The notes beneath the pieces are model-generated. The model had not been told where the DNA came from. It saw nothing but the letters and a program-made list of their open reading frames with translations, and made no database searches. From the IMG/VR virus record IMGVR_UViG_3300005537_000001, positions 62,001 through 126,000 of that record: DNA of 64,000 nt. The stretch is one strand, 5' to 3'. The position numbers and the translations under genes were made by a program. Positions 28,233 through 49,006 of this stretch are shown here, in pieces (positions within the stretch are counted from its first letter, which is position 1; every line of letters starts with the position of its first letter).

Positions 28233-28261
28233 TTTACACCAGACCAGATGCGTGATAGAAT
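28233..28261 (+). promoter_or_regulatory. sigma70-like promoter of tmRNA
   Basis: TTTACA-17-TAGAAT with TG. Confidence 0.7.
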
Positions 28262-28267
28262 AAGTTT

Positions 28268-28623
28268 GAAAACAGCGTAAACGTAGATTGCGAAAATTGG
28301 TGACACCCGGGTTCGAATCCCGGCATCTCCACCAAAAGCATCTTCTTTTGGGGCAGACCTTTGAGGAGTCGAGGTAGCAACGTAAACCCTCCAGTAAATG
28401 TTGCATTGAGGATGCTTTTGATGGGGATGATACATGGCATTCGACCATCAGTGAATAACCTTCTATGCGCTCGATAGGCGTTCGCCGTAAGCGAAGCAAA
28501 TCCAATAAAAGCTAATGATGCTTTTTTCGGGGAAGAACTACGCCTAGCGGCCTAGTCCCTGCGGGGCTTAAACCACCCTGTAACCTAACGGTTAGGGAGG
28601 AGATCAGACAAGGGTCTCCTCCC
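28268..28623 (+). ncRNA. ssrA: circularly permuted two-piece tmRNA, tag ANDAFFGEELRLAA
   Basis: T-arm and CATCTCC-ACCA at 28306-28334 precede GGGGATG at 28423; G3:U70 pair; tag 28511-28555. Confidence 0.9.
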
Positions 28624-28646
28624 GCTCCTACGCTAGGAGGCGTGAA

Positions 28647-29269: not shown

Positions 29270-29586
29270 TGGGTGATGGAGATACATTAACTGTTACGAT
29301 AGACGTAGCAGGTATTATCGCCGCGATCAATGCCCAAACGGCAGCTATCACCGCGCAAACTGCCGCTATAAACGCTCAGGGAGCTGCGATAGCTAGCGCG
29401 GTAGCTGTAGCCGCTGACAACGTTAAGTCGCTGGCGATCATCACCGAATATTGGCGCCAGCTTGATTTCGCATTCGGTCAACTTATAACCAAAAAGCCGG
29501 TCGATTTTCCTGGAGCTGAAGCGATAGCGCGAACGCCACCAATCGTACCTGCCCATAACACAGTTCTAACTAAAATAGAGTCATAA
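29266..29586 (+). CDS. Ala-rich protein with AI(N/T)AQ heptad-like repeats
   Basis: AAINAQTAAITAQTAAINAQ. Confidence 0.6.
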   Translation: MMGDGDTLTVTIDVAGIIAAINAQTAAITAQTAAINAQGAAIASAVAVAADNVKSLAIITEYWRQLDFAFGQLITKKPVDFPGAEAIARTPPIVPAHNTVLTKIES

Positions 29587-29587
29587 T

Positions 29588-29944
29588 ATGTCAGAAATTT
29601 CAGAAATTCTCGCGTTCAAAATGATCATAGGTGAAGAAGTAGTCGGCGAAGTAGTCGACGTGGTTAGAAGCACGTGGCTGCTTGAAGGTAAGTCGGGTAA
29701 CGGTGGTGAGATCACCGCCTACAAGGTCCGCCGTCCGCACATTCTTCGCTTTATTCAATCAGCAGGTGGTGCCAACTTGGCTTTCATTCCATGGACGCTC
29801 TGCAACCCTACCATTGAGGTCATTACCATTCCAGCTTCAGCTGTTCTTCTAACGTTTCCACCCGCCGCCAACGTTGAGAAGCAGTACATCGAGCAGACAA
29901 GCGGTATCGCTCTCGCATCTCCAGGAACGCGAATTAGCAAATAA
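29588..29944 (+). CDS. Sm-like-fold protein of T4-like phages (tentative)
   Basis: K..IGEEVVGEV...PW...Y...TSGI pattern. Confidence 0.5.
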   Translation: MSEISEILAFKMIIGEEVVGEVVDVVRSTWLLEGKSGNGGEITAYKVRRPHILRFIQSAGGANLAFIPWTLCNPTIEVITIPASAVLLTFPPAANVEKQYIEQTSGIALASPGTRISK

Positions 29945-30240
29945 TATGCAGTCAATCATCCTCATAATACTCGGTGGAATTGGTTTAGGCCTATCCTTGG
30001 AAGTTCCTCACCGTGAGAACTTTACACCTGACCACGCGGTTGGTGCCGGCGTCTGCGGAATTTTGTGGGTTATGCTCTGCTTCGCGCTAGCGATGAGGCT
30101 AACGTTTGCCGCGTAATCTACATAAATGAAGATCACGGTTACGCAGGTTAAGAGAAAGTTTACTTTTTGGGGATTCTGTATATAACTATATCAAATCAAC
30201 TAAACGCTAGTTGATCACTTCTAACCAACGTGGAGCACGT

Positions 30241-31359
30241 ATGGACAAAAAGAAAGAAATTACCGTATTCATCGGTCGATTTTCCCCATTTCACAATGGT
30301 CACGCTGAAGTGCTCAAGCGGGCGCTGGAAACCTCACAAGTAGTTCTCGTGCTGGTTGGCAGCTCTGGGCAGGCACGGACCACCAAAAATCCCTTCACCT
30401 TCGAAGAACGCCGTCAGATGATTACCGACTACGTTCGATACCTAGGCGCGATATGGCGCCCTGGTCAGGGAGGTGAGCTAATTGTCGAACCAATCTACGA
30501 TCATCCCTACAACGACAACAAGTGGATTGAAGGCGTCCAAGCCGTTGTCAACAGGGTAAAGGCAGAAAATACCAGCCTTCGTGGACTGTCAAACTGGTAC
30601 AATTATCTTACCGGCTCAGATCGCGACGCAACTACCTGGTATCTCAACGCCTTCGGTGATTTCTTCGAGAAGGACCTTATCACCAACCATTCAGCTGGAT
30701 TAGACTTAAGCGCGACAAAGATTCGTGACATTCTATTCAACACGGAAACGCTGGTTGAGCTTGAAGTCAAGCTGAATAAGCTTGTACCGTCATCGACTCT
30801 CAGCCACCTGATCGCGTTCGTGGATCATCACCCAGCATATTCGGAGCTGGCGAAGGAATACCTGTACATTGAAAGGTACAAGGAGAGCTACAAGCTGGCT
30901 CCCTATCCGGTAAGCATTCAAACCGTCGACGCGTGCGTGATTCAATCCGGACACGTGCTTGTCTGCGTTCGCGACAACTTCCCCGGCAAGGGGCTTTGGT
31001 GCCTGCCGGGTGGACATCTTGACATTGATCTCGGAGAACGCCTCCTTGACGCGGCCATCCGTGAGCTCACGGAGGAAACTCGAATCGAGCTTTCAAAAGC
31101 GCAGCTTTATGGCTCCGTGCGTGACAAGGAGGTGTTCGATCATCCCGGCCGCAGCCTCAAGGGTCGAGTTATAACGATGGCCTACCTCTTGAAGCTGGAC
31201 GATACGAAACCCCTACCGAAGGTGAAACCTCAGAAGGGAGAGGTTAAGAAGGTAATGTGGTTGCCGATCGCCGAAGCGCTGTCGAGCAAGAACATGGACA
31301 AGTGGTTCGACGATCACTATTCGATTTTGGAAACCCTATACGGGCGGATTAAAAACTGA
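30241..31359 (+). CDS. nadM: bifunctional NMN adenylyltransferase/Nudix ADP-ribose pyrophosphatase
   Basis: GRFSPFHNGH; Nudix box GG...GE....AA.REL.EET. Confidence 0.92.
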   Translation: MDKKKEITVFIGRFSPFHNGHAEVLKRALETSQVVLVLVGSSGQARTTKNPFTFEERRQMITDYVRYLGAIWRPGQGGELIVEPIYDHPYNDNKWIEGVQAVVNRVKAENTSLRGLSNWYNYLTGSDRDATTWYLNAFGDFFEKDLITNHSAGLDLSATKIRDILFNTETLVELEVKLNKLVPSSTLSHLIAFVDHHPAYSELAKEYLYIERYKESYKLAPYPVSIQTVDACVIQSGHVLVCVRDNFPGKGLWCLPGGHLDIDLGERLLDAAIRELTEETRIELSKAQLYGSVRDKEVFDHPGRSLKGRVITMAYLLKLDDTKPLPKVKPQKGEVKKVMWLPIAEALSSKNMDKWFDDHYSILETLYGRIKN

Positions 31360-31398
31360 GAGAACGACTCTCAGGTCATTCACGATAAGGAGCTTATC

Positions 31399-32889
31399 AT
31401 GGCAGCAAAAAGAAAAGAATTTACGGTCGAGCAATACCTCTCTCCTTCCAAGAAGGATATTGAGTATATGCAGCCGGATCAGTTGAAAATCAGCTTGATC
31501 TGCCGCATGGACAGCTACAAGTTTGCGCACCCCTTCGCTTACCGTAAGGGAATTCAGGCGATGAGCGCCCACATGCTGGCGCGAGTCAAGAGCCACGTTA
31601 CGATCATTCCAGCCGGAATGCAACTGCTGACCAAGAAGTATCTAACGCAGCGCATCACGATGGCCGACGTGGACGCCGCAGAGCAATTTGCGATTGGTCA
31701 CTTTGGCCGCAAGCTCTTCGCTCGCGACAGCTGGGAAGGCGTTGTCAACGAGCATGGCGGAGCCATTCCCATCATCATCCGCGCGGTGCCGGAAGGTACT
31801 CGAATTCGCGGTGGGCAGCCGCTGTATTCAGTAACGGCGTTCGGTGAGCTGTATTACTGGATGTCAACCGCCTTCGAAACGCTCCTGCAGCGCGGTATCT
31901 GGTATCCAACGACCATCGCCACGATGGACTACGATATCAAAAATGATATTCGTATGTTCTACGAAGATACTGGCGCGGACATGGCGATGCTTCCATTCGC
32001 TCTCCACGATTTCGGTGCTCGCGGTGTGACCGCACCCGAACAGGCAGAAATTGGCGGTTTTGCCCACACGATTGGATTCATGGGTTCAGACAACATCGAA
32101 GGAATACTTACCGCAAACTTCTACTACAAGTGCGCGATGTCGGCTTTCTCGGTCTACGCTACCGAGCACAGCGTTGAGTGCTCCTTCGGGCTGGGTTCTG
32201 AGGATGAGGTTGAGTACATTCGACATCAGCTGCGTCAAGCTCCAGCTGGATCGATAGTTTCGATCGTCATCGACGGTAAGGATACCTACCGAGCAACCGA
32301 AGCGATCTGCACAACGCTTCGAGATGAGGTGATCGCGTGCAAGGCGAAGGTAGTTCTTCGCCCAGACAGCGGTGATATGCAGGAAATCGTTCCTCGCCTG
32401 CTCCGCCGGCTCGATCAAGCGTTTGGGCACGTCGTTAACAAGAAGGGCTTCAAGAAGATCAACTACGTTGGTATCCTGCAGGGAGACGGAGTCGATCACC
32501 TCGCGATTCGCAGCCTGCTTGGCAACATCATGTCGCGTGGATATTCGGCCGACAACGTTATCTTCGGCAGCGGAGGTGCGCTGCTGCAGAAGGTCAACCG
32601 TGACACCTACAAGTTCGCCCAAAAGGCGAGCGCCATGATGGTTGATGGGAAGTGGATTGGATTGGCGAAAGATCCCATCACCGACAAAGGTAAGAAATCG
32701 GAGGAAGGCGTGCTCACCTTGCTTCGCAGTCGAATGACCGGAGAGCTGATGACCGGTCGGTTGGACGATGGTCCATTCGACACCGAGTGGGAAGATGTTC
32801 ACCAGCTTGTCTATCACTGCGGCCGTCTCTTCAACGAGACAACCCTCGATGAGGTTCGCAATCGGGTTGAAGCCCTAGGAAACTACTGA
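31399..32889 (+). CDS. nadV: nicotinamide phosphoribosyltransferase
   Basis: DSYK..H, HDFG.RG, ATEHS, RPDSGD, QGDGV, FGSGG.LLQK..RDT. Confidence 0.93.
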   Translation: MAAKRKEFTVEQYLSPSKKDIEYMQPDQLKISLICRMDSYKFAHPFAYRKGIQAMSAHMLARVKSHVTIIPAGMQLLTKKYLTQRITMADVDAAEQFAIGHFGRKLFARDSWEGVVNEHGGAIPIIIRAVPEGTRIRGGQPLYSVTAFGELYYWMSTAFETLLQRGIWYPTTIATMDYDIKNDIRMFYEDTGADMAMLPFALHDFGARGVTAPEQAEIGGFAHTIGFMGSDNIEGILTANFYYKCAMSAFSVYATEHSVECSFGLGSEDEVEYIRHQLRQAPAGSIVSIVIDGKDTYRATEAICTTLRDEVIACKAKVVLRPDSGDMQEIVPRLLRRLDQAFGHVVNKKGFKKINYVGILQGDGVDHLAIRSLLGNIMSRGYSADNVIFGSGGALLQKVNRDTYKFAQKASAMMVDGKWIGLAKDPITDKGKKSEEGVLTLLRSRMTGELMTGRLDDGPFDTEWEDVHQLVYHCGRLFNETTLDEVRNRVEALGNY

Positions 32890-33092
32890 TGAATTCCATT
32901 GACCTCTGCGGGTTGATCAAGGGAATGAAGCTGCCGGCGGCGATAGCTGAAATCGAAAAGGCCGGGTGTACCGCGCGGTACACCTACCTTAACGGTAAGA
33001 ACCTGGTTGACAATGTAACGAGCGATTTCGTTGATACCCGCCTCAACCTTCGGGTTGAGCGCGACATCGTTAAGCACGCGAGAATCGGTTGA
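32889..33092 (+). CDS. peptidase inhibitor I78-like small protein
   Basis: VTSDF...RLNL.V...I...G. Confidence 0.5.
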   Translation: MNSIDLCGLIKGMKLPAAIAEIEKAGCTARYTYLNGKNLVDNVTSDFVDTRLNLRVERDIVKHARIG

Positions 33093-33250
33093 GCAAGAAG
33101 CCAAAATTCAAGAAGGTAACGATACCGGTAGGCAAGCGCTGCTTGTATTGCCGAGGTACCGGGCTGAAGCGAGCGTATGATCCGACGCGGACCGACGATT
33201 GCACGTGCTACTATTGCGCCGGCACCGGTTACGACGGAACCCGGTCATGA
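33055..33250 (+). CDS. DnaJ-type CxxCxGxG zinc-finger mini-protein (start uncertain)
   Basis: CLYCRGTG and CYYCAGTG; stop overlaps pnuC ATG. Confidence 0.55.
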
Positions 33251-33819
33251 TCCTCGAAATCGCAGCAAACGCTGTTACCGCGGCATCGATACTTCTCGCA
33301 ACTAGAAACAGCATTCATACCTGGTGGACTGGCATAATCGGCTCACTGCTGTTTCTCGCGCTGTTCTATCTCAACCAGCTCTACGCCGATTCGATGCTGC
33401 AAATTTTCTTCGTCGCTACCAGCTTGATGGGATGGTGGCAGTGGAAGCACTTTCGGGGTAAGAAAGTAGATAGGCCAATCTCCAAAACGGATGGTTCTAC
33501 CGCCATCATTATCTCGTGCTTAGCGATCGTAGCGACCATGGGATATGGATGGCTGCTAAAAACATTCACGAATGATTTTATGCCCTACGTCGATGCCGCG
33601 GTAATGGCGCTCAGCATAATCGCGCAGTGCCTGCTGATGCAGCGCAAGCTTGAAAGCTGGTGGGTTTGGGTAGTCGTGAATACCATCTCAATTCCTCTCT
33701 ACGCCTCACGTGGAATGTATGTTACGGCGGCGCTCTACGCTGCCTACTGGATCAACGCATGGATTGGAGCAGCATCATGGAAAAACATAGCGCGGTCTCA
33801 AATGTTGAGCGCGGCATGA
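33247..33819 (+). CDS. pnuC: nicotinamide riboside transporter
   Basis: W..GII, LYAD..LQ.FF...GW..W, DA....SI.AQ.L...K..E.W..W. Confidence 0.9.
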   Translation: MILEIAANAVTAASILLATRNSIHTWWTGIIGSLLFLALFYLNQLYADSMLQIFFVATSLMGWWQWKHFRGKKVDRPISKTDGSTAIIISCLAIVATMGYGWLLKTFTNDFMPYVDAAVMALSIIAQCLLMQRKLESWWVWVVVNTISIPLYASRGMYVTAALYAAYWINAWIGAASWKNIARSQMLSAA

Positions 33820-33966
33820 GCGAAGAAACGTGGCGGTGGAACGTCGGTGAAGGTACAGAGGAGCAGAGAAATCTCGCTCTCATCTACTGCGCGATGGATC
33901 ATCCGAATCCAGTAACTCGTCACGTCTGCCGTGAAATCTTGGCGCGGAAGTTAACGGAGAAATCAA

Positions 33967-34977
33967 GTGAAGACATACGGCCTAATCGTCGGTAAGTTCT
34001 CCCCGCTTCACCGCGGTCATGAGCACCTCATCAGTGAAGCTGAAAAACAGTGTGATAGCCTGTTGGTTCTGAGCTACTCGAATCCGGAATTTCGCAAGTG
34101 CGAGGCAAAGATTAGAAAAGAATGGTTGCAGGCACGGTTTCCTTCGGTTCGCTGCGTCGTTCTTGACCCGATTAATTTTCCATCGATGCCAGACAACCAA
34201 GCGAGCGACGCTGAACAGCAGGAATTTTTCAGCTGGATAGTCAACGACGTTTTGGAATATCCGGTGACCCACCTGTTCGCTAACGAGCGATGGGCTGAAA
34301 AGTGCGCACTAAACCTTTCGATTGGCGCGGGGCACCATGTAACAGCGGTAGCATTGGATCCACTGCGGGTGAAGAATCCGATCAGCGCGACATCCATCCG
34401 AGAAGCTCCACACCTCAACGCAAATTGGATGTCACCATTCGTTCGCGCGTCATACGTTACGCAGAAGATAGTTCTTCTTGGTGGTGAATCAACGGGTAAA
34501 ACGACTCTCGCGAAAGCCCTTGCTGAAAAATTCGATACCAGCTGGGTACCTGAATATGGCCGTGAGCTGTGGGAAGAAAAGAATGGTGAGCTTGTTTTTA
34601 GCGACATGTTGAGAATCGGTCATGAGCAGAAATTTCGTGAAAAGTATTTCAACATCGGCGCTAATCGCTATCTCTTCTGCGATACCTCTCCTCTTACCAC
34701 GATGGGGTACAGCATGTGGCTGTACGGTAAAGTTGATGACAAGCTCGTGAAGCTGGCTGAAGAACTATACGACGGCGTCATTTTTTGCCAGGCAGATTTT
34801 GCGCACGTGAACGACGGGACGAGAGTTGGGCATGATTTTCGAAGCATGCAGCAAGATTGGTACAAGCACGTCATTCCGAAGATGAAGTGCCCAATCATCT
34901 CGGTGACCGGTACCATTGAGGAACGCGTTCTTACCGTGACCAACTGGCTGAAGACATCCAACCACAATTGGAACTAG
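33967..34977 (+). CDS. nadR: NadR-like NMN adenylyltransferase/ribosylnicotinamide kinase
   Basis: GKFSPLHRGH; GGESTGKT; EYGR; DT. Confidence 0.92.
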   Translation: MKTYGLIVGKFSPLHRGHEHLISEAEKQCDSLLVLSYSNPEFRKCEAKIRKEWLQARFPSVRCVVLDPINFPSMPDNQASDAEQQEFFSWIVNDVLEYPVTHLFANERWAEKCALNLSIGAGHHVTAVALDPLRVKNPISATSIREAPHLNANWMSPFVRASYVTQKIVLLGGESTGKTTLAKALAEKFDTSWVPEYGRELWEEKNGELVFSDMLRIGHEQKFREKYFNIGANRYLFCDTSPLTTMGYSMWLYGKVDDKLVKLAEELYDGVIFCQADFAHVNDGTRVGHDFRSMQQDWYKHVIPKMKCPIISVTGTIEERVLTVTNWLKTSNHNWN

Positions 34978-34985
34978 GAGATAAA

Positions 34986-37194
34986 ATGAAGGCGATGATG
35001 CTCGCTTTACTGTTGATCGGTGCCGCTCAGGCGGATGAGCTTGATGAGGTAGTTGTAACAGCTTCGCGGCAAGGTATCCAGTCGCTCCAGAAGATACCAG
35101 CTTCCATCACGGTAGTTGACCTAAAGGCTGAAGGACGCCTTGGAGCTACCGATCTCAGCGATGTCGCTAATTCGATTCCATCTCTCACCATCGAGCAAGG
35201 TGGACCAGGGTTAAACAAGATTGACATCCGTGGAATTACCGTTGAAAATGCCGACGTTCTCAACAACATCGACAGCAGACCTCTTGTCGCGGTCTACGTT
35301 GACGATACCCCGCTCGCCCTCGACGGCTTCAATCCGGATCTTAAGGTATTTGACCTTGACCGCATCGAGGTGCTGCGCGGTCCTCAGGGCACCCTCTACG
35401 GTGCCAGCTCCATGGCCGGCACGATTCGCTACATCACGAAAAAACCGAATCCCCAGGAATATTCTGGATCCGATGAAATTACGGTTTCAGATACGGTTGG
35501 CGGCGGCGTCAACTACGGCATCAAGGCGAGCGTCAACCTCCCGCTCAGCGCTCAAACGGCGCTGCTACTAAGCGGATACAACGCGCGCAATTCTGGATGG
35601 ATCAACAACATTCAGAATGGTCAGAACGGTGAAAATTGGGATCGGTCAACTCAAGGTCGAGCCGCGCTGCGTTGGACGCCGTCTGACTATTTCACCCTCG
35701 ACGCGAGCGTTCTCTTCGAGGAGCTTAACACCGGTGGAAGCAACTTTTCCTTCTCGGGCTTGGGCAAGAACGAATACGCAAGCTTAACTCCAACTCCAAT
35801 CACCGACAACATGAAGGTGTACAACCTAACCGAAACGATTACCCCGGATTTCGGTACTATCATCTCCTCAACCTCGTACACCACGCGAACTACCGGTTTC
35901 AACGACCAGGGGCAGTACCTTTCGGAGCTGTTCTTCGGAGTAACCGAGCCTACCACCTACGTCAACCAGAACACCCTGTCGCAGTTCTCCCAGGAATTTC
36001 GAGTCGTTTCTCGCCAAGATCAGCGCACGCGCTGGATTGTTGGCACCTTCTTCAATCACCTCAGCCGCGTCAACTACCAAGATGACAGCGGCGTCGGTTT
36101 TGGGCAGTACATTGGCTTCGATCCTCGAACGATCGGTGGATTTACGGCGGACAGCGTTTTCTCTGGAACTCAGGGCGTTAGGGAACGCGATTTTGGCATC
36201 TTTGGTGAGGTTACGTGGGCGCTAACGGATCGCCTCGACTTTACGGCCGGAGCCCGCTACTTCAACTGGCGACAGCGCTTCAACCTGCAGTTTGGTGGAC
36301 CAGGTGGATACGGAGCGTACGATACCGGCAGCAACGTTGTCAACAAGCAGCTCATCGAGGACGTTGGAGCTAAGGCGCAGGGAGTCAACCCGCGCTTCAT
36401 CGTTAGCTACAAGCTTTCCGATGACGCTATCGTCTTCGCCGAGGCGGCTGAAGGATTTCGCTACGGTGGTGCGAACGAGGCGGTACCAAACGCCAACGTT
36501 CCTGGCGCGTGCGGTGGGCAGCTGCAAAGTCAATTTCACCTGACTTCAGCTCCACCGTCCTACGGCCCAGATCACCTGTGGAGCTACTCGCTTGGTGAGA
36601 AGTCGCTCTTCCTTGACGACAAGCTTCGCGTCAACGCGACCATCTTCCTCATCGATTGGAAGAACGTGCAGGAGGCTGCCTACCTCGGTTCTTGCTCGTA
36701 TACGTACACAACCAACGCTGGAACGGTTATTAGCAAGGGCGGAGAGCTGGAAGCGACCTACAAGCTGGCACGCTATCTTACGCTCGGAATTAACGGATCC
36801 TTTACCCATGCCGCGGCAGATGGTGCTCTTCCCAACGTTGGAGCTCAAAGCGGAGATCTTACTCCGTACAGCCCAGAATGGCTTGGAGCCGCAACTGTTG
36901 ATTACAAGCTTGGTTTCAGCCGGTTGAACGTTGAATATTCGTACCACGGTCGAAGCGGAACGCGCTTCGACCCAGCTGATCCCAGCTACGTAGTTCTACC
37001 AGCCTACAAGAATCTCAATCTGGCTGAAACGTTCGAAGTTCGGTAGGACGCAGGTTAGCTTGTTCTCGCGGAACGCGTTGAACAGCTCACAGGTAACGAT
37101 GATCTACCCGGATCTTCTCGGCACTCAGCCTGGAAATCAGGTAGCGTACGCCAGACCCAGAACCATTGGGGTTCGATTCTCACAGCAATTCTAG
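34986..37194 (+). pseudogene. TonB-dependent receptor with +1 frameshift near 37041
   Basis: signal peptide, EVVVTA, plug RIEVLRGPQGTLYG; 50-aa tail ...PRTIGVRFSQQF in next frame 37042-37194. Confidence 0.88.
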
Positions 37195-37272
37195 GAGCAC
37201 CTATGAACTTTTCTATCAAGCATCTTCCGAATGGTGATTTCGAAGTAATTTACCCAGCGCAACAGTAAGTTT

Positions 37273-37301
37273 GAAGGCTGAGAATTCTCAGCCTTCTTTT
37301 T
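37273..37301 (+). terminator. rho-independent terminator
   Basis: GAAGGCTGAG/CTCAGCCTTC stem plus T-run. Confidence 0.8.
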
Positions 37302-37364
37302 GCGCGGGATTTGACAGGTATCCCAAGGGGCAATAAATAAAACTGAACCCCTGGAGAACTTCCC

Positions 37365-38444
37365 TTGTCAAATCCCCGCCTACTTTTTATAGTCAAGCGT
37401 CGTGAAGACTATTCCGACGACACCTCATACTCCTACCAAGGTGTATCGACCGGCCTTTGGAACTCAGCTAGATTTGTCGTTGACATGCTCAATAGAAATC
37501 ACATTGAAGCAAAGCTTGTAGAAGTTATCGACAACAATTGCATAGACAGAGAAGTCTTCAACTACAAACCAACTGACGTCATCATTGAGGGCCTGTGGGT
37601 CGTTCCAGAAAAATTCGAAGTCCTTACCAAGCTCCACCCGACGGTAAAGTGGAATATCCGACTGCACAGTGATCTACCATTCTTAGCGAATGAAGGTATC
37701 GCTATGCAATGGATTACCGATTACGTAAAGTTTCCTTCAGTTTCGATATCGACGAATTCTCCTAGAATGCTTGACGAGCTAACATTCTTGCTAGATCTTC
37801 AAAACTATTGGTCAGATGAAGAGCTACGCGAGAAGGTTTACTACACACCAAATTACTACATGCCAGCCATCGTAAGCCCAGCTGATAAATTGTCTATCGA
37901 CTATAGGGATTACATTGACGTTGCCTGCTTTGGCGCAATTCGTCCTTTGAAGAATCAGTTGCTTCAGGCTATCGCCGCCCTAAAGTTTGCTGATGATCTC
38001 GGTAAAAATTTGAATTTCCACGTCAATGTGGGTAGAGTAGAAAATAAAGGAGATCCAGTTCTACGCAACCTCATCGATTTATTTGACTCAGTTAGCGCCC
38101 AAGGTCATACCCTTGTTATGCACCAATGGACCACACACGATAAATTCATCGAAATAGTTCGCAACATGGATATCGGATTGCAAGTCTCATTTACGGAAAC
38201 ATTCAACATTGTTTCTGCTGACCTGGTTGCATGTGGTGTTCCAATCGTCGTATCTAAGGAGGTCAATTGGGCTGTACCTCCACATGCTGATCCTACCGAC
38301 TCAAATGACATAGCGCGTAAGATGAAGCTCGTTTGGGAATTCAAGCGCTGGGATTGCATGAACCTGAATGCGTCTGCCAATCTCGATGCCCTGAAGGAAT
38401 ATTCTCGCAAGTCGATTAAGATTTGGAAGAAGAAATTCGTCTAA
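37365..38444 (+). CDS. GT-B (GT4-like) glycosyltransferase
   Basis: RPLKN and ETFNIVSADLVACGVPIVVS. Confidence 0.75.
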   Translation: MSNPRLLFIVKRREDYSDDTSYSYQGVSTGLWNSARFVVDMLNRNHIEAKLVEVIDNNCIDREVFNYKPTDVIIEGLWVVPEKFEVLTKLHPTVKWNIRLHSDLPFLANEGIAMQWITDYVKFPSVSISTNSPRMLDELTFLLDLQNYWSDEELREKVYYTPNYYMPAIVSPADKLSIDYRDYIDVACFGAIRPLKNQLLQAIAALKFADDLGKNLNFHVNVGRVENKGDPVLRNLIDLFDSVSAQGHTLVMHQWTTHDKFIEIVRNMDIGLQVSFTETFNIVSADLVACGVPIVVSKEVNWAVPPHADPTDSNDIARKMKLVWEFKRWDCMNLNASANLDALKEYSRKSIKIWKKKFV

Positions 38445-38473
38445 TTTACATCTGATTCACCGCGTGATATAAT

Positions 38474-39148
38474 GTGCAGATGGATGCACCTCTATCATTC
38501 AATGCTTTAGCAGCAGCTGAACGAACTATCAGTTCGAACGCGTTCTTTTACATCGTCGCCCACAACATCCTCAACCACACAGCACTTTCTGTTGTTAGGA
38601 TGGGTGATGGCGAGCGCCTTCTGCTCGATGCAAATGGCGCCGATGGTGAAATCATTCGCCGATTCGATGACGCATGGTTAGAAAGAATGGGTTTGACAGG
38701 GATGACTTATGGTGAGCTTCGGCGGCGATTGCAGCTCGCGGTAGACACCACTCAATATTTTGCGCCATCCATAACCGGCCTAGTCAACAAAAGTTTCGAT
38801 CTTCACTCGTATTTTTCCCATAAGAAGCTCGTGGACAATTTCTTTATCAACCAATGGGACGCTGCTCAAAAAGAAGAACTCTTGATGAAGGCCGATGGTG
38901 TCCTTTTAATTCACGCAAATGCTGAAATCGCTGACGCGATGCAGCGCAAGTATACCAGATTCAAAGTTTCATTCTTGAAACTGTCAATGTGGGATCAAAC
39001 TGAAGATGTGATCGCTAAATCGCGAACCAATCCTGCACAACTCGTTCTATTTTCTGGTGGCTGCGCTGGAAAATACATTGGTCCTGCGATCGCCAAGCAG
39101 GGAAAAGTAGTTATCGACGTTGGTAACTCGATGAGCGTTTGGCTGTAA
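38474..39148 (+). CDS. GT-D-fold glycosyltransferase-like protein
   Basis: SVVRMGDGE and VIDVG; promoter TTTACA-17-TATAAT at 38445. Confidence 0.65.
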   Translation: MQMDAPLSFNALAAAERTISSNAFFYIVAHNILNHTALSVVRMGDGERLLLDANGADGEIIRRFDDAWLERMGLTGMTYGELRRRLQLAVDTTQYFAPSITGLVNKSFDLHSYFSHKKLVDNFFINQWDAAQKEELLMKADGVLLIHANAEIADAMQRKYTRFKVSFLKLSMWDQTEDVIAKSRTNPAQLVLFSGGCAGKYIGPAIAKQGKVVIDVGNSMSVWL

Positions 39149-42835: not shown

Positions 42836-42910
<75 letters not shown>

Positions 42911-42915
42911 TTTTT

Positions 42916-43001
42916 GGGTGTGTATGCAAGAGGCCAAAGCGCGCAGTCTGTAAAACTGACTCCTTCGGGATTCGTAGGTTCGACTCCTACCGCACCCACC
43001 A
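42916..43001 (+). tRNA. tRNA-Tyr(GTA)
   Basis: cloverleaf, long V arm. Confidence 0.92.
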
Positions 43002-43005
43002 TTTT

Positions 43006-43139
43006 AGCAAACCGTTGATTAGGATTATCTGGCGCAGTGAGTTTCGATACCACGCCTACAGGTGCTAACATCTGTAGAGCCTCAGTTTAGGGAGAGGCAT
43101 CTGACCGCCTACGGGCACCCCTATCGCTCTTTGTTTGCT
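43006..43139 (+). ncRNA. element copy 1, permuted, around T-arm-like/acceptor/D-arm pieces
   Basis: AGCAAAC-CG..GATTATC ... TTT-GTTTGCT. Confidence 0.7.
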
Positions 43140-43217
43140 CTTTTAAAGGGACACGGCTGCAGTTGTGAACGTGGAGAAATCCATTCGGTGGCATGCTGCA
43201 GCAACCTCCCTACTTTT

Positions 43218-43324
43218 TGCAACCGCTTAAAGAAGGTTATCTAAGTTCAACTCTTAGGCTGCTCACGCAGTCACGGCATATCCTCACGGATACGGCGCCA
43301 ACTCCGTCTTTTACCTTTGTTGCA
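43218..43324 (+). ncRNA. element copy 2, permuted
   Basis: TGCAAC-CG..GGTTATC, CTAAG-TTCAACT-CTTAG T-arm, TTT-GTTGCA. Confidence 0.7.
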
Positions 43325-43524
43325 TTTCTTTCGAAGTGTCTCGTTAAAAACGGGTCTTACAGGTCCACGAAGATCGAGTCAACCGTCACTTTGAATCCTT
43401 CCTCTTGATCGACTAAGCCAAAAGTCACCGGCTCACGATGCTGGAAACGTCGCATAACCGACTGTAGAGGACCATTTTACAGCTACCAGAACGATCTCTG
43501 CTTAAGCAAATCGCTGGGGCTCCT

Positions 43525-43598
43525 GCGGGTTTGGTATAGAGGTTGTGCCAAAGCCTTCCAAGCTTTAGAGGCGGGTCCGAGTCCCGCAACCCGCTCCA
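43525..43598 (+). tRNA. tRNA-Gly(TCC)
   Basis: cloverleaf. Confidence 0.9.
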
Positions 43599-43783
43599 AT
43601 TTAATCCTTCCCGAGATGATGTGAAGGGCTGGTCTTCGCCAGTGAAGCTGGACAACCCAGCGATCATCAAATACTACTCTGCTGCATCCGGTAACAAGGG
43701 CCTAGGTAAGCTCTTGGGGTGCAGTGGGACCAGTGAAAGTCTGGCGCATGGATCGCTTGCGAAACGGGTCCCTTGAATTTTAT

Positions 43784-43871
43784 GCGCTTGTAGGCGAATT
43801 GGCATAGCCACTGGTTTGAGGTACCAGAACTCGAAAGGGTCCTGTGGGTTCGAGTCCCACCATGCGCACCA
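43784..43871 (+). tRNA. tRNA-Leu(GAG)
   Basis: cloverleaf. Confidence 0.9.
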
Positions 43872-44202
43872 AATACAGGAATTAAATTCCTCCGGAAGTC
43901 CGGCGTGCGGGTTCCACGATAACGCGCCCAACATCTAAGTCCTATTTGAGAACGCGGGTTGAAATCCTCCCCTCATCTAGGCGCATTTTTGTTCGCTGGT
44001 AAGCAAACGGTACATAGCCGTGGGTCTAACTGTCGGAATTAGCCGGCTCATTGACGAGCAAGTGACAGTCGAACAAATTAAACCCGACCGAAGCTGATTT
44101 AGTTCGGCTTAGCGTAGAAGAACCGCCGCAGGATATTGCGGCGAGACGGGCATCGCCACTCAGGGCGTCTGGGCACAGCCCATAAGTACTGAGACGATTT
44201 AT

Positions 44203-44280
44203 AGCGGATGAGTGAAACGGTTTACATTCAAGGCTCATAACCTTCGAGACACTAGGTTCGACTCCTAAGATCCGCTACCA
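44203..44280 (+). tRNA. tRNA-Met(CAT)
   Basis: cloverleaf; Met versus Ile2 not certain. Confidence 0.8.
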
Positions 44281-44308
44281 CCAGGTTAGGGTGATGCATA
44301 AATAACTA

Positions 44309-44944
44309 ATGCATCACCTTTTATACAAAACCACAAATATTCTCAACAATCGCTTCTACGTTGGGATGCACTCTACTAAGAACCCTAAAGACAGGTATCT
44401 TGGGAGTGGCAAGCGAATAAAGTACGAGATCCAAAAGTATGGTAAAGAAAACTTCAAGAGAGAAATCTTGGAGGAGTTCCCAACTCGTAAGGCGCTCGAA
44501 GATGCTGAAGCAGAAGTCGTGAATGAGGAACTTCTTTCCGATCCTCTCTGTCTCAATTTGAAAAATGGTGGAGAAGGTGGTGGTAGAATATGGAATTCTA
44601 ACCATGCAAAGAAATTTCATCGGGCTGGTTGGGAAGCGATGCATAGAAACAAAGATCATGTAGCAGCCGGATTAAAATCGGGTAAAACTAGAGAAAAAAG
44701 AAATCAAGAAGGATTGTACCCTCCTGGAACTTTTACGAGTCATTTTGGTGGAATGCAGCATTCTGAAAAATCTCGTGCGCAGATGAAAAATACTCATGCT
44801 AGAAACGCTCATCAGCGGGCTGAAAAAAATTCAAATTTTGGCAAGCGAAATGCTTGTGTTAACAAGGACGGAAAGAATAAAAGAATTCCACTAGATCAAC
44901 TTGAAATGTTTATAACTGATGGATGGACTAAAGGTCTAGTTTAG
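44309..44944 (+). mobile_element. free-standing GIY-YIG (Seg-like) homing endonuclease
   Basis: LLYKTTN..N.FYVG.H....D.YLGSG. Confidence 0.85.
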
Positions 44945-45015
44945 AAATACGTTTTTCGAGGTGGCGGAGTTTCCACCATTTGTAGGCCATGGATGGCCCA
45001 AAAGTTTACGCGAAT

Positions 45016-45105
45016 GCCTGGGTGGCGAAATTTGGTATCCGCGGCGGGCTTAGAACCCGTTGATCTTGATCGGTCGTGCAGGTTCGAGTCCTGTCCCAGG
45101 CACCA
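45016..45105 (+). tRNA. tRNA-Leu(TAG)
   Basis: cloverleaf. Confidence 0.9.
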
Positions 45106-45179
45106 ATTAGCGTCGGCAAAACCGACGAAAGCGCGGGCAGCCATTGTGATTTAGAGATCACGTATGGTCCGCGCAGTTT

Positions 45180-45259
<80 letters not shown>

Positions 45260-45465
45260 AAATTCGCTCAACAAGAGCGCGTCAGTTTGATCGGAAAAAT
45301 CCAGTGTTCACCTGGATAATGCACTGCAAGGCCAAATGTCCTAGGAAACTTTTGGTACTCAGTTATTGGTAGAAGAAATAGAGAGTAAGCTTCTCAGAAA
45401 TAAGCTACCAAGCTAAAAGCAAACGGCAGCGGGGCTAGCGTTGTCCATAACGATCAATTTAATTC

Positions 45466-45540
45466 GGGGGTATGTTGAAGCTGGGATCATAAGACGTTCG
45501 CAACGTCTAGTCGCGAGTTCGACTCTCGCTACCTCCACCA
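45466..45540 (+). tRNA. tRNA-Ala(CGC)
   Basis: G3:U70. Confidence 0.85.
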
Positions 45541-45556
45541 AATCTAGGAGAATAAT

Positions 45557-45739
45557 ATGAACCCATTAGATCAAGAGGAACACATCAAGCGCATCGTTTG
45601 CGAAAGTCAAACGTATACTGAAGTGATTAAGAAGCTGGGTTTCTCCAAGAATGCAAATTATGAGTGGATCGTCAATTTTATCAAGGAAAACAACCTTAAG
45701 TTGAAACCACTCTCGTTCGAGAACGCTAATTTAAGTTAG
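45557..45739 (+). CDS. small hypothetical protein
   Basis: AGGAG RBS. Confidence 0.6.
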   Translation: MNPLDQEEHIKRIVCESQTYTEVIKKLGFSKNANYEWIVNFIKENNLKLKPLSFENANLS

Positions 45740-45787
45740 CTGCAGTAGAAGTCTGCCGTTTGGGCGTCGAAAAGTCCACAAGATTAC

Positions 45788-45913
45788 GAGGTAATAGCTC
45801 AATAGTAGAGCATCAGGGAAGTAGAAGAAATAGGAACTACGCTGAAGTACAAAGCGACTATCTAAAGTATTGAAAACCGGAAGACAATGGTGCGATCCCA
45901 TTTTACTTCACCA
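45788..45913 (+). tRNA. tRNA-Phe(GAA)-like gene with 52-nt insert
   Basis: acceptor, D and T arms intact; TTGAAAA loop after insert. Confidence 0.65.
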
Positions 45914-46021
45914 TCAAATAAAGCTGCTACGAGCGAGTGAAAAATAGCAGCGCCGCCGGAAACGGTCCCACCTGGAGTGGTTAAGAGAATCTCGCATGCG
46001 GCAGAAATGCCGTCTCTTTAT

Positions 46022-46166
46022 GAAGTTGTAGGGAAGTGGTTAAACCCAGCGAAGCCGAAAGGCATATCCATTCTCGCCTTTTGTTGCGCAAGCAACCGAT
46101 AGAAAATGGTTATCATTAAGTCGCTGCCGAAAGGCTACGCCGGTTCGAATCCGATTGCCAACTTCA
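46022..46166 (+). tRNA. Tyr-like tRNA body interrupted by element copy 3 (46066-46114)
   Basis: GAAGTTG/CAACTTC acceptor; anticodon unresolved. Confidence 0.55.
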
Positions 46167-46219
46167 CTCCCAATCTTTTTGCTGGTTCTTATAAATATTC
46201 TCGTAAGGAGAATTTTAAA

Positions 46220-46930
46220 ATGAAGCCTGCAAAATATGTAAGACAAGAAAATCGAAAATATCACTACATTTACAAAATTACTCGATTTGATAATCATTAC
46301 TATTATGGCCGTCATTCAACGGATAATTTAGATGATGGATATTTTGGTAGTGGCAAACGTCTTTGGCATTCCATAAATTATCATGGCATAGAAAAACACA
46401 CTAAGGCGATTTTGGAATATCTTCCAACACTAACCTCTCTAAAAATAAGAGAAAGCCAGATAGTAAATGAAACATGTCTAAATGATCCCCTCTGCTTGAA
46501 CCTCCAATTAGGAGGTGGTGGTGGATTCATTAGTGAAGAACATCAGCGAAAGGCCTCATTAGCAGGTAGAGATAAAGCTCTCACTGCAATGAGGGAAATT
46601 TTTAAAAGTGGTAGCGAAGAAGCGGCGCGAAGAGCAAAAAATTCTGCTGCTACTCAAAAGCGTATGAGGCAAAATGGTGAGTTAACATATACCAAAAGAG
46701 AGCGAAATAACATCACCACTGTAGCCGCAACATTAGCCGCCGCCACTCCTAAATCTAGGGAAAAGAAAAAGAAAACATTTGCTGAGCGAAAACATCAGCA
46801 GGGTGAAAAGAATTCAAATTTTGGAAAGAGAAATGCTGTCATCAACAAAGATGACAAGAATAAGAGAATCCCTCTGTCAAAATTAGATGAGTATCTAAAT
46901 GCCGGATGGACCAGAGGTCTAATACGATAG
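46220..46930 (+). mobile_element. second GIY-YIG (Seg-like) homing endonuclease
   Basis: YIYKIT...YYG.HST....D.Y.GSG; C-terminus shared with 44309. Confidence 0.85.
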
Positions 46931-47012
46931 GGAGGTTGTCTATGTCATCGCTAAACGCAACAAGGGTAATCTACGCCACAGCGTAGGTGGAACCACCGCA
47001 AAATTTAGAAGG

Positions 47013-47273
47013 ATGTGCGAGGTATATCGATACTTCTCGCGTCACTGGGAACACGTTTTAGATTTTAGCGACGAGTCGCTAGTCGAACTGTTCAACCATG
47101 AGTCCTACGGAACTCCATGTTCACCAAAGAACGGATTTCTAGTAGGCAAGCAGCACCTTAACGTCAACGTTGCCATGTGGAAGGAAGACATCATCAAGGG
47201 AGTTCTGTTTAAACAGGAACTTTACGATGGTGAATTTCCAACTTGGTGGCTTGACAGTATTTTCAGGGTATAG
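47013..47273 (+). CDS. hypothetical protein
   Basis: ORF track. Confidence 0.6.
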   Translation: MCEVYRYFSRHWEHVLDFSDESLVELFNHESYGTPCSPKNGFLVGKQHLNVNVAMWKEDIIKGVLFKQELYDGEFPTWWLDSIFRV

Positions 47274-47338
47274 CTCAGCGGGAGAGCGCTCGTTTTGGAA
47301 ACGAGAGGTCGCACGTTCAATCCGTGTTACCCTGACCA
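47264..47338 (+). tRNA. tRNA-Pro(TGG)
   Basis: cloverleaf. Confidence 0.88.
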
Positions 47339-47401
47339 CTTTATACGTCCACCATGCTGTGGAATGTGCACCTAAGACCGTCACGCGGTCTTTGCCTATA
47401 T

Positions 47402-47477
47402 GCCACTTTAGCTCAGCTGGTAGAGCAAAGGTTTTGTAAACCTGAGGTCGTGGGTTCGATCCCTACAAGTGGCACCA
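47402..47477 (+). tRNA. tRNA-Thr(TGT)
   Basis: cloverleaf. Confidence 0.9.
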
Positions 47478-47625
47478 AATTCAGCTCTCGCAAGAGAGTT
47501 CGAGCGCGGCTCGAAGGCGCTCCGATGCTGTCCAGCGCGACAGTGGCTTTCTTCGAAAGGCGGATTCGAACCGCCGGGTTAGTAGCCAGTGATTGTTAAT
47601 CTCAAAACCCCGAAAAATTTTTCAT

Positions 47626-47748
47626 GAGGAAGTAGCTCAGTGGCAGAGCAGCCGCCAAACATCGTTTACGATATTTTGTCGAGCAATCGACCGTTGTATA
47701 ATGGTTATCCAAAGCAGCTTGTCGTAGGTTCGAATCCTATCTTCCTCT
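47626..47748 (+). tRNA. tRNA-Trp(CCA)-like gene interrupted by element copy 4 (47661-47709)
   Basis: GAGGAAG/CTTCCTC acceptor; TCCAAA directly after element. Confidence 0.65.
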
Positions 47749-47782
47749 CTTATTCTTTGAATATACGATTGATAAATATCGT

Positions 47783-48325: not shown

Positions 48326-48363
48326 TTTCTTGGTTGCGGGTTCAAGTCCTGCGGGACCCACCA
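48287..48363 (+). tRNA. tRNA(CAT), Ile2-like
   Basis: body resembles bacterial ileX-type tRNAs. Confidence 0.85.
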
Positions 48364-48370
48364 CATATTT

Positions 48371-48445
48371 GCGACTGTAGCTCAGGGGTAGAGCAAACGA
48401 CTGATAATCGTTAGGTCGTAGGTTCAAATCCTACCTGTCGCACCA
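48371..48445 (+). tRNA. tRNA-Ile(GAT)
   Basis: cloverleaf. Confidence 0.92.
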
Positions 48446-48461
48446 TCAAAACGAGGAACAA

Positions 48462-49001: not shown

Positions 49002-49006
49002 GTTTA

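What the first reader, a model, noticed from the sequence alone, without database searches (positions are those of the whole stretch)
34986..37194. Phage TonB-dependent receptor at the end of the NAD operon, split by a 1-nt frameshift
It follows nadR almost directly. The frame stops at 37046 (GTT CGG TAG), but the frame starting at 37042 gives a 50-aa barrel end with terminal Phe, which is typically needed for BAM insertion. It may be an assembly error, a recent inactivation or a recoding site. With PnuC and NadR it would form an outer-membrane-to-cytoplasm route for NAD precursors; alternatively a receptor decoy or exclusion factor.
Basis: partly seen in the sequence, partly recalled or inferred. 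Interest (0 to 1): 0.65.

Follow-up and report, generated by a model that had tools for sequence, protein, structure and literature searches.

The report
Broken phage outer-membrane NAD-precursor gate
A 368-kb T4-like soil phage carries a TonB-dependent outer-membrane transporter gene fused into its NAD-salvage (PnuC-NadR) operon, a three-gene block conserved in at least five related phages, but in this genome the gene has very recently been broken by one extra base that removes the last two barrel strands.

Summary
Window 34986-37046 encodes a 686-aa TonB-dependent transporter (signal peptide, TonB box, Plug, barrel) that stops at TAG. The missing 51-residue barrel end, ending in Phe, continues in the +1 frame to 37194. 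Five intact orthologs (715-764 aa) show exactly one extra base at 37035-37038.

The window lies in a complete 368-kb T4-like jumbo phage. Two assemblers give the identical sequence, but probably from one read set. The site has no homopolymer, no slippery motif and no conservation, and the genome does not recode TAG. The tail still shows strong purifying selection, and the conserved residues are kept. I therefore read this as a very recent inactivation, not recoding.

The more interesting result is the gene itself. PnuC-NadR-TBDR is a tightly packed block, often with overlapping stop and start codons. It is conserved in six related phage contigs, and the phage TBDRs form one clade nested among proteobacterial ones. 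PnuC+NadR is the validated counter-defence pathway NARP3, and NAMPT+NMNAT (NARP2) lies just upstream. The TBDR is most likely an outer-membrane gate for NAD precursors; its substrate is untested. Bacterial relatives of the TBDR are not linked to NAD genes. I rate it a new variant of a known kind.

The parts
30211..31359 (+). NadM-type NMN adenylyltransferase fused to a Nudix domain (the NMNAT half of NARP2)
   Evidence: Pfam CTP_transf_like + NUDIX. Full-length NCBIfam match to the bifunctional NMNAT/Nudix models: 281 bits, below the equivalog cut-off.
31399..32889 (+). Nicotinamide phosphoribosyltransferase (NAMPT/NadV; the NARP2 partner)
   Evidence: Pfam NAMPT_N + NAPRTase. NF006629 scores 452.5 bits, above its cut-off of 405.
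33199..33819 (+). PnuC nicotinamide riboside transporter (inner membrane). The JGI gene call starts at 33247.
   Evidence: PF04973 164 bits. TIGR01528 78.9 bits, above its cut-off of 42.45.
33967..34977 (+). NadR-like bifunctional enzyme without an HTH domain (NMNAT + ribosylnicotinamide kinase)
   Evidence: AAA_28 107 bits + CTP_transf_like. TIGR01526 matched end to end (1-318 of 325), 134.7 bits, below its cut-off. The GKFSPLHRGH and GGESTGKT motifs are present.
34986..37046 (+). TonB-dependent transporter, frame-0 ORF (686 aa), ending at a premature TAG (37044-37046)
   Evidence: Translation. Plug + barrel Pfam domains. 77% identity to the intact P0002 and 60% to the intact P0003.
34986..35033 (+). 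Signal peptide (16 residues, ending AQA)
   Evidence: Read from the translation. Short hydrophobic leaders are shared by the phage orthologs. No signal-peptide predictor was run.
35046..35063 (+). TonB box (EVVVTA)
   Evidence: Translation. The E, V, V and T columns are invariant in the phage alignment.
37035..37038 (+). Frameshift site: one extra base within GAA-G, between codon GAA and codon TTC
   Evidence: DNA alignment with four intact orthologs. Fragment alignment: frame 0 ends at P0003 residue 679 and the +1 frame resumes at residue 680.
37039..37194 (+). Displaced +1-frame tail: 51 codons for strand 21, loop 11 and strand 22, with the C-terminal Phe, then stop TAG at 37192-37194
   Evidence: Translation. 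86% identical to the tail of P0002; pN 0.106 against pS 0.713. Strand assignment comes from the AF2 model of P0003.
37273..37301 (+). Intrinsic terminator closing the NAD/TBDR transcription unit
   Evidence: 10-bp stem with 6 G-C pairs, a 4-nt loop and a T run; the strongest terminator-like site in 29500-38600.

Best explanation
The gene is a genuine, vertically inherited phage gene for a TonB-dependent outer-membrane transporter. It forms the third cistron of a conserved PnuC-NadR-TBDR block in a lineage of T4-like jumbo soil phages.

In intact relatives the most likely mechanism runs in three steps. (1) The host Sec and BAM machineries insert the transporter into the outer membrane of the infected cell. 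(2) Powered by the host's TonB-ExbBD, it concentrates a scarce pyridine precursor (nicotinamide riboside, NMN or NAD) into the periplasm. (3) PnuC passes nicotinamide riboside across the inner membrane, and the NadR-like kinase/adenylyltransferase traps it as NMN and then NAD+. This supplements the adjacent NAMPT + NMNAT pathway and sustains replication when NAD+ is depleted.

In this genome a single-base insertion at 37035-37038 shifts the frame at the periplasmic turn between strands 20 and 21. The product lacks the last beta-hairpin and the C-terminal beta-signal, so it should not assemble. The gene is a very recent pseudogene.

Shown: the gene's family, the break, the phage context, the conserved linkage and the single origin of the phage clade. 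Inferred: the substrate, the TonB dependence in vivo, the counter-defence role and the loss of function.
For: Family and fold:
- Plug + barrel Pfam domains.
- An AF2 model of the intact ortholog P0003 has pLDDT 89.7, pTM 0.89 and 22 strands. Foldseek places it in the TonB-dependent transporter fold; the top hit is FyuA, TM 0.78/0.89.

The break:
- One extra base relative to intact orthologs. It maps after P0003 residue 679, the turn before strand 21.
- The sequence is identical in the JGI and Logan assemblies.

Recency:
- Tail pN 0.106 / pS 0.713 against body pN 0.134 / pS 0.772, measured against L006.
- 62 of 63 invariant and 86 of 94 near-invariant family columns are kept. That is no worse than the intact P0002.

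Phage identity:
- Direct terminal repeats, Gp23, terminase and PHROG matches.
- The related contigs share backbone genes with this genome, including Gp23 at 62% on L011.

Conserved block:
- PnuC-NadR-TBDR occurs in the window, L002, L010, L011 and L012, with NadR-to-TBDR gaps of +8, +1, -4, -1 and -22 nt.
- The flanking genes differ between contigs.
- Divergence is in step across the module: TBDR 53-65%, NAMPT 55-69%, PnuC 50-71%, NadR 43-56%.
- The six phage TBDRs form one clade, SH-aLRT 100.

Dependence on the host and published context:
- The phage has no TonB or ExbB.
- PnuC + NadR-like is the experimentally validated, NR-dependent NARP3 pathway (PMC13464706). NAMPT + NMNAT is NARP2 (10.1101/2024.02.11.579819).
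- An operon of a TonB-dependent transporter, a Pnu-family permease and a trapping kinase is established for thiamine in Bacteroidetes (PMC5613172).
- The beta-signal lies in the final strand (PMC10945584).
Against: - No uptake or binding data exist for any member of this clade.
- The closest bacterial relatives (46-54% identity) sit beside sarcosine oxidase or dimethylglycine dehydrogenase, MFS, SBP_bac_5 or aromatic-catabolism genes, never pnuC/nadR.
- Four pnuC loci, in the three genomes (L022-L024) that topped the genome contigs TBDR hit list, have no TBDR within 8 kb.
- Nicotinamide riboside (255 Da) can cross general porins in many bacteria.
- The searchable literature describes no TonB-dependent transporter for NAD precursors.
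- This phage reached high enough abundance to assemble completely with the gene broken, so the gene is dispensable at least in the short term.
- The break was seen only in contigs that probably derive from one read set. A consensus error or a minority intact allele is not excluded.
Confidence: 0.6

Rival explanations
1. Sequencing or assembly artefact: the gene is intact in the real phage, and the extra base is a consensus error.
For: Only one run holds the sequence, and it is probably the source of the JGI contig. Only contigs, not reads, could be laid, at a word depth of 14. The tail is perfectly preserved, which is also what an artefact would give.
Against: Two different assemblers (the JGI contig of 368,054 bp and the Logan contig of 105,986 bp) agree base for base over 8 kb. 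The exact 686-aa product is on record on four contigs. The site is not a homopolymer: GAAG, longest run two bases. No alternative contig or variant is seen.
Confidence: 0.12
2. Programmed +1 ribosomal frameshift, or stop-codon recoding, produces the full-length transporter from the split gene.
For: The tail is intact and under purifying selection. The premature stop is TAG, and the genome encodes two tRNAs with anticodon CUA. CGG, the codon before the stop, is among the less used Arg codons.
Against: All five orthologs are in one frame, so the shift is not conserved. There is no slippery codon whose tRNA could re-pair in +1, and no Shine-Dalgarno-like stimulator upstream. CGG, at 6.7 per 1000 codons, is not rare. 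Reading TAG through in frame 0 meets a second TAG three codons later and yields a tail unrelated to TBDRs. TAG is a normal stop in this genome: 63 of 335 long ORFs end in it, and treating it as sense lengthens ORFs less than doing so for TGA or TAA.
Confidence: 0.03
3. The transporter has nothing to do with NAD. It is a host-derived gene that imports another nutrient (a siderophore, or a methylated amine as the neighbours of its bacterial relatives hint), or it acts at the cell surface as a receptor decoy or superinfection-exclusion factor. On this view it merely rides at the end of the NAD operon.
For: Bacterial sister proteins are linked to sarcosine or dimethylglycine oxidation and other catabolic genes, not NAD genes. 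NCBIfam gives only generic siderophore-receptor subfamily matches below cut-off. TonB-dependent transporters have been reported as accessory genes in other (temperate) phages with proposed iron or heme roles (10.64898/2026.05.02.722434). TonB-dependent transporters are common phage receptors (PDB entries of FhuA with T5 pb5 appear).
Against: The position directly behind NadR, often with overlapping stop and start codons, is kept in five lineages whose TBDRs are only 53-65% identical and whose other flanks differ. The phage clade is monophyletic and has diverged in step with PnuC, NadR and NAMPT. No iron-related genes are adjacent.
Confidence: 0.25

Closest known systems
NARP3 (phage PnuC-like transporter + HTH-less NadR-like enzyme; Escherichia phage TrudiRoth Bas30_86/87; PMC13464706)
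   Same: A phage-encoded PnuC next to a NadR-like NMNAT+RNK enzyme without the HTH domain. The logic is the same: import nicotinamide riboside and convert it to NAD+. NadR-like genes occur in 771 phage records.
   Different: NARP3 is described as a two-gene module, and the paper never mentions TonB. Here a third, outer-membrane gene is fused to the module, and NARP2 lies in the same gene run. The NadR-like protein is at most 34% identical to any phage NadR in GenBank. The hosts are uncultured soil bacteria, not Enterobacteriaceae.
Bacteroidetes thiamine operon OMthi (TonB-dependent transporter) - PnuT - Tnr3 kinase (PMC5613172)
   Same: The three-tier architecture is the same: a TonB-dependent outer-membrane gate, a Pnu-family facilitator and a cytoplasmic trapping kinase in a single operon, for a small cationic vitamin.
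   Different: That system is cellular, not viral. Its substrate is thiamine and it is controlled by a TPP riboswitch. Here the permease passes the NR-type PnuC equivalog model and no riboswitch is found.
Proteobacterial TonB-dependent transporters of the Steroidobacteraceae/Sphingomonadales type (P0005-P0120)
   Same: The same family, with 39-54% identity over the full length. The phage clade is nested within them.
   Different: The bacterial members have longer leaders, and those whose neighbourhood was examined have other genomic neighbours. No named genome holds a relative closer than 44%.
Solved TonB-dependent transporters (FyuA 4epa, Fiu, FptA, FecA, PqqU)
   Same: A 22-strand barrel with an N-terminal plug; TM-score 0.7-0.9.
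   Different: Only 13-19% sequence identity. These matches give no information on the substrate.
TonB-dependent transporters reported as accessory genes in phages of ammonia oxidisers (bioRxiv 10.64898/2026.05.02.722434)
   Same: Phage-borne TonB-dependent transporter genes.
   Different: That preprint reports them in its section on morons and auxiliary metabolic genes and proposes iron and heme uptake, with no link to NAD genes. Here the gene sits in a T4-like jumbo phage inside a metabolic operon.

Membership tests
TonB-dependent outer-membrane transporter | N-terminal signal peptide followed by a TonB box | tested here: met
   A 16-residue leader ending AQA, then EVVVTA. The TonB-box columns are invariant among the phage orthologs. 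This was judged by inspection; no predictor was run.
TonB-dependent outer-membrane transporter | Plug domain | tested here: met
   PF07715 scores 63.1 bits against a cut-off of 23.9, covering residues 34-146.
TonB-dependent outer-membrane transporter | Complete 22-strand beta-barrel | tested here: not met
   The frame-0 product matches PF00593 only to position 417 of 436. It ends at the turn after strand 20 of the AF2 model of the intact ortholog. Strands 21-22 are encoded in the +1 frame.
TonB-dependent outer-membrane transporter | C-terminal beta-signal with a terminal aromatic residue | tested here: not met
   The frame-0 product ends ...FEVR. The terminal Phe, conserved in at least 90% of 50 relatives, is present only in the +1 frame.
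NARP3 (phage PnuC + NadR-like NAD+ reconstitution) | PnuC-type nicotinamide riboside transporter | tested here: met
   TIGR01528 scores 78.9 bits against a cut-off of 42.45.
NARP3 (phage PnuC + NadR-like NAD+ reconstitution) | NadR-like enzyme with NMNAT and RNK modules and no HTH domain, encoded next to PnuC in a phage | tested here: met
   TIGR01526 is matched over 1-318 of 325 positions (134.7 bits, below the equivalog cut-off). Both nucleotide-binding motifs are present and there is no N-terminal HTH. The gene lies 147 nt after PnuC.
NARP3 (phage PnuC + NadR-like NAD+ reconstitution) | NR-dependent restoration of NAD+ and rescue from NAD-depleting defence | not testable with these tools
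   This needs infection assays like those in PMC13464706.
NARP2 (NAMPT + NMNAT) | Both enzymes encoded together in a phage | tested here: met
   NAMPT: NF006629 452.5 bits against a cut-off of 405. NMNAT-Nudix: full-length match of 281 bits, below its cut-off. The two genes are adjacent at 30211-32889.
Programmed +1 frameshift site (prfB / Ty type) | A slippery P-site codon, a slow A-site codon or stop with a stimulator, and conservation among orthologs | tested here: not met
   There is no re-pairing codon and no Shine-Dalgarno-like element. CGG is not rare. All five orthologs are unshifted.
Stop-codon-reassigned phage genome (TAG as sense) | Genes interrupted genome-wide by in-frame TAG, together with a suppressor tRNA | tested here: not met
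   Two tRNA-CUA genes exist. But TAG ends 63 of 335 long ORFs, and reading it as sense adds only 2 ORFs of 500 aa or more. Gp23 and the terminase contain no internal stops.

The most novel reading that the evidence does not exclude
In its intact relatives this clade is the first TonB-dependent transporter dedicated to pyridine nucleotide precursors (NR, NMN or NAD). It would also be the first virus-encoded outer-membrane gate that completes a trans-envelope counter-defence pathway: outer membrane TBDR, then inner membrane PnuC, then cytoplasmic NadR. That would let jumbo phages of porin-poor soil bacteria rebuild NAD+ from nanomolar external precursors.
Probability: 0.4. Interest if true: 0.75.

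Novelty: new variant of a known kind. Interest (0 to 1): 0.55.

Why it matters
NAD+ depletion is a major bacterial anti-phage strategy, and phage NAD+ reconstitution pathways (NARP1-3) have only just been defined. NARP3 depends on external nicotinamide riboside, so how that precursor crosses the outer membrane sets the limit on its usefulness.

A conserved phage operon that adds a TonB-dependent gate suggests some phages solve that step themselves. It also points to a TonB-dependent transporter substrate class not described in the literature searched here, and it supplies intact natural orthologs that can be tested directly.

It further shows that a T4-like phage (lifestyle not tested here) can invest in an outer-membrane protein that needs the host's Sec, BAM and Ton systems. 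The broken copy in this genome is a natural knockout and implies the gate is conditionally dispensable.

Tried and rejected
- GenBank phages: megablast of the region found nothing. tblastn with the TBDR found only weak partial matches (38% identity or less, over 59% of the query or less), most of them in unannotated fragments or host-like DNA.
- IMG/VR pattern scans, with the single protein and with the alignment, found no relative.
- TAG recoding was rejected. Programmed frameshifting was rejected on context and lack of conservation.
- I asked whether the insertion destroyed an EcoRI-type site, because CGAA-G-TTCG would be the palindrome CGAATTCG without the central base. GAATTC is not avoided in the genome (147 observed, 96 expected), so I dropped the idea.
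- I asked whether the 359-aa gene after the terminator belongs to the module. It has no Pfam or PHROG match and no similarity to the gene at the same position in L002, so it does not.
- A riboswitch upstream of the module (TPP or NAD+) was sought with Rfam at E up to 1; none was found.
- I looked for a bacterial precedent for pnuC next to a TBDR. Four pnuC loci in three genomes had none within 8 kb. The sample is small, so this is weak evidence.
- Literature searches for a TonB-dependent transporter of NR, NMN or NAD returned nothing relevant.
- Read laying could show only Logan contigs, not reads, so allele frequencies at the break remain unknown.
- One call failed on a usage slip ('of' needs a G handle) and was redone correctly.
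- The large representative search, complex prediction and the Atlas searches were not used, because the family was already clear.
Full report
**1. The observation**

- An ATG at 34986 lies 8 nt after the stop of the NadR-like gene, with a GGAG in the spacer.
- It opens a 686-codon frame that ends GTT CGG TAG at 37038-37046.
- The product has a short signal peptide ending AQA, a TonB box (EVVVTA), a Plug domain (63.1 bits) and a TonB-dependent-receptor barrel (96.9 bits). The barrel match stops at position 417 of 436 in the Pfam model.
- The +1 frame is open from 36991. It encodes a typical barrel end that finishes ...PRTIGVRFSQQF before a TAG at 37192-37194.
- A strong intrinsic terminator follows at 37273-37296, so the transporter gene closes the transcription unit.

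**2. Where and what the break is**

The word search found close full-length relatives of 715-764 aa (P0002 77%, P0003 60%, P0004 57%, P0008 53% identity). A metagenome scan added a fifth (L012, 732 aa).
- All have the barrel end in frame.
- A DNA alignment of the last 260 nt shows one extra base in the window and no other indel.
- Protein homology follows frame 0 through ...LAETFE and resumes in +1 at FGRTQ.... This puts the extra base within GAA-G at 37035-37038. Frame 0 stops at P0003 residue 679 and the tail starts at residue 680.
- An AlphaFold2 model of the intact P0003 (50-sequence alignment; pLDDT 89.7, pTM 0.89) gives a 22-strand barrel around a plug. Foldseek matches solved TonB-dependent transporters, with FyuA at TM 0.78/0.89.
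- By my strand count on that model, residue 679 is the end of strand 20. The break therefore lies in the periplasmic turn and removes strand 21, the last extracellular loop and strand 22 with the terminal Phe.
- The final strand carries the beta-signal that engages BAM (PMC10945584) and must pair with strand 1 to close the barrel. The 686-aa product should therefore not assemble. This last step is inference.

**3. Real, artefact or recoding?**

*Evidence that the break is real.*
- The 8 kb around the gene is base-for-base identical in the JGI contig (368,054 bp) and in an independent Logan assembly (105,986 bp).
- The exact 686-aa product is on record on four contigs.
- The only public run holding the sequence covers it with one contig at word depth 14 and no variant.
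- That run is probably the source sample, so these are independent assemblers, not independent samples. Raw reads could not be seen.
- The site is not a homopolymer.

*Evidence against recoding.*
- The five orthologs are unshifted.
- No codon at the site allows tRNA re-pairing in +1, and no stimulatory element is present.
- CGG is used at 6.7 per 1000 codons.
- The genome carries two tRNAs with anticodon CUA, so I tested TAG reassignment. TAG ends 63 of 335 long ORFs. Making it sense adds only two ORFs of 500 aa or more, fewer than for TGA or TAA. The capsid and terminase genes have no internal stops.
- Read-through in frame 0 meets another TAG three codons on and gives a non-homologous tail.

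*Evidence that the break is recent.*
- Against its nearest relative (L006), the displaced tail has pN 0.106 and pS 0.713. The body of the gene has pN 0.134 and pS 0.772.
- The window copy keeps 62 of 63 invariant and 86 of 94 near-invariant family columns. Its 8 departures compare with 10 in the intact P0002, and most of them are shared with P0002.

The break is therefore evolutionarily very recent. My odds are roughly 0.8 for a real recent inactivation, 0.12 for an artefact and 0.03 for recoding; the rest is left unassigned.

**4. The context is a phage, and the gene belongs to it**

- The window is bases 62001-126000 of an IMG/VR record with direct terminal repeats, estimated complete.
- The genome has a T4-type Gp23 capsid gene (E 1e-94), a large terminase, 44 tRNAs and a tmRNA. 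Its neighbouring genes match PHROG families.
- The gene run upstream of the transporter is NMNAT-Nudix, NAMPT, PnuC, then a NadR-like enzyme with both catalytic motifs and no HTH.
- The relatives' contigs share backbone genes with this genome. Examples are the capsid gene at 62% on L011, nine further non-NAD genes on L002, and the two genes downstream of P0002 on L006.
- On every contig that extends upstream (L002, L010, L011, L012), the order PnuC, NadR-like, TBDR is kept. The NadR-to-TBDR spacing is +1, -4, -1 and -22 nt, against +8 here. The genes downstream differ.
- Pairwise identities are commensurate across the module: TBDR 53-65%, NAMPT 55-69%, PnuC 50-71%, NadR 43-56%.
- In a maximum-likelihood tree of 46 proteins, the six phage transporters form one clade (SH-aLRT 100). 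It is sister to three bacterial proteins and nested in a proteobacterial family.
- The best explanation is a single capture from a bacterium, followed by vertical inheritance as part of the module.
- The phage encodes no TonB or ExbB, so the transporter must use the host's.

**5. What it most likely does**

- PnuC plus an HTH-less NadR is the recently validated phage pathway NARP3. It imports nicotinamide riboside, converts it to NAD+ and overcomes Sir2-HerA defence in an NR-dependent way (PMC13464706). That paper describes two genes and never mentions TonB.
- NAMPT plus NMNAT is NARP2.
- The closest architectural precedent for the three-gene form is the Bacteroidetes thiamine operon: a TonB-dependent OMthi, the Pnu-family PnuT and the kinase Tnr3, mostly in one operon (PMC5613172).
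- By analogy and by conserved linkage, the phage transporter most likely concentrates an NAD precursor across the outer membrane to feed PnuC and NadR. That would matter most in hosts without general porins and at soil concentrations.

This step is inferred, and there is real evidence against it.
- The nearest bacterial relatives (46-54% identity) lie beside sarcosine oxidase or dimethylglycine dehydrogenase, an MFS transporter, a peptide-type binding protein or aromatic-catabolism genes.
- No named genome has a relative above 44%.
- Four bacterial pnuC loci examined have no TBDR nearby.
- No TonB-dependent transporter for pyridine nucleotides turned up in the literature searches.
- The main rival (about 0.25) is an unrelated nutrient gate or a surface decoy or exclusion factor that rides on the operon. 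Conserved translational coupling over deep divergence argues against a passenger, but does not exclude it.

**6. Comparison and novelty**

- The gene is a member of the TonB-dependent transporter family by signal peptide, TonB box, plug and barrel. The copy in this window fails two defining features, a complete barrel and the C-terminal signal, and should be annotated as a frameshifted pseudogene.
- The PnuC and NadR genes meet the sequence-level definition of NARP3, and the two upstream genes meet that of NARP2.
- What is new is the third, outer-membrane component fused to a NARP3-type module in a lineage of T4-like jumbo phages. It is absent from 50,697 GenBank phage records at useful similarity and was not found by two pattern-seeded scans of IMG/VR.
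- I rate it a new variant of a known kind. Interest is moderate (0.55). The broken state in this genome is ordinary. The conserved module is unexpected and directly testable with the intact orthologs.

**7. Limits**

- No raw reads were available, and there is no independent sample of this phage.
- Hosts are unknown.
- The substrate is untested.
- The tree used a quick search with SH-aLRT support only.
- Contexts were examined for only five bacterial relatives.
- Signal peptide and strand numbering were assigned by inspection of the sequence and the model.

Noticed in passing
window 28242-28646 (+): The phage encodes a permuted (two-piece) tmRNA with the tag ANDAFFGEELRLAA (ARAGORN; Rfam RF04321, 75.1 bits). 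From my own knowledge, permuted tmRNAs are typical of Alphaproteobacteria and a few other groups, so this is a host clue.
   Followed up: partly
window 62199-62272 (+); a second copy at G000:126682-126759, just outside the window: Two tRNA genes with anticodon CUA (amber suppressors, which ARAGORN labels Pyl) in a genome that otherwise uses TAG as a normal, if least frequent, stop. Their role is unexplained.
   Followed up: partly
window 42836-55851 (+), continuing at G000:139898-145869: A very large tRNA complement: 22 tRNAs in this stretch and 44 in the genome.
   Followed up: no
window 30211-32889 (+): A NARP2-type pair (NMNAT-Nudix and NAMPT) lies immediately upstream of the NARP3-type pair, so the phage carries two NAD+ reconstitution routes in one gene run. 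Relatives L002 and L010 also have a stand-alone AAA_28 (kinase-like) gene whose homolog in this genome lies at G000:214831-215364.
   Followed up: partly
window 30211-37194 versus its flanks: The NAD/TBDR genes are richer in G+C (50-54%; GC3 57-65%) than the window as a whole (48.5%) and the next gene (43.6%; GC3 48%). This fits acquisition from a host with higher G+C.
   Followed up: no
window 37204-37269 (+): A 21-codon ORF (MNFSIKHLPNGDFEVIYPAQQ) sits between the transporter's natural stop and the terminator. It is probably not a gene.
   Followed up: no
window 37365-38444 and 38474-39148 (+): After the terminator and a promoter-like site come a 359-aa protein with no Pfam, NCBIfam or PHROG match and a GT-D-like glycosyltransferase. 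The 359-aa protein has no counterpart at this position in L002.
   Followed up: partly
L007-L009 (bacterial contigs holding P0009) and the contig of P0005: The closest bacterial relatives of the phage transporter sit next to sarcosine oxidase (SoxABDG) or a dimethylglycine-dehydrogenase-like gene. P0009 additionally has a GntR regulator, a sugar-type ABC transporter and a creatinase nearby. This hints at a methylated-amine substrate for that bacterial subclade.
   Followed up: no
L011 3-809 and 1911-2930; L012 5762-6448: In relative L011 the T4-type major capsid gene lies about 2 kb upstream of the NAD module, with an HNH-type endonuclease gene between them. L012 has a SegE-like GIY-YIG endonuclease downstream. 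Homing endonucleases may help move this module.
   Followed up: no
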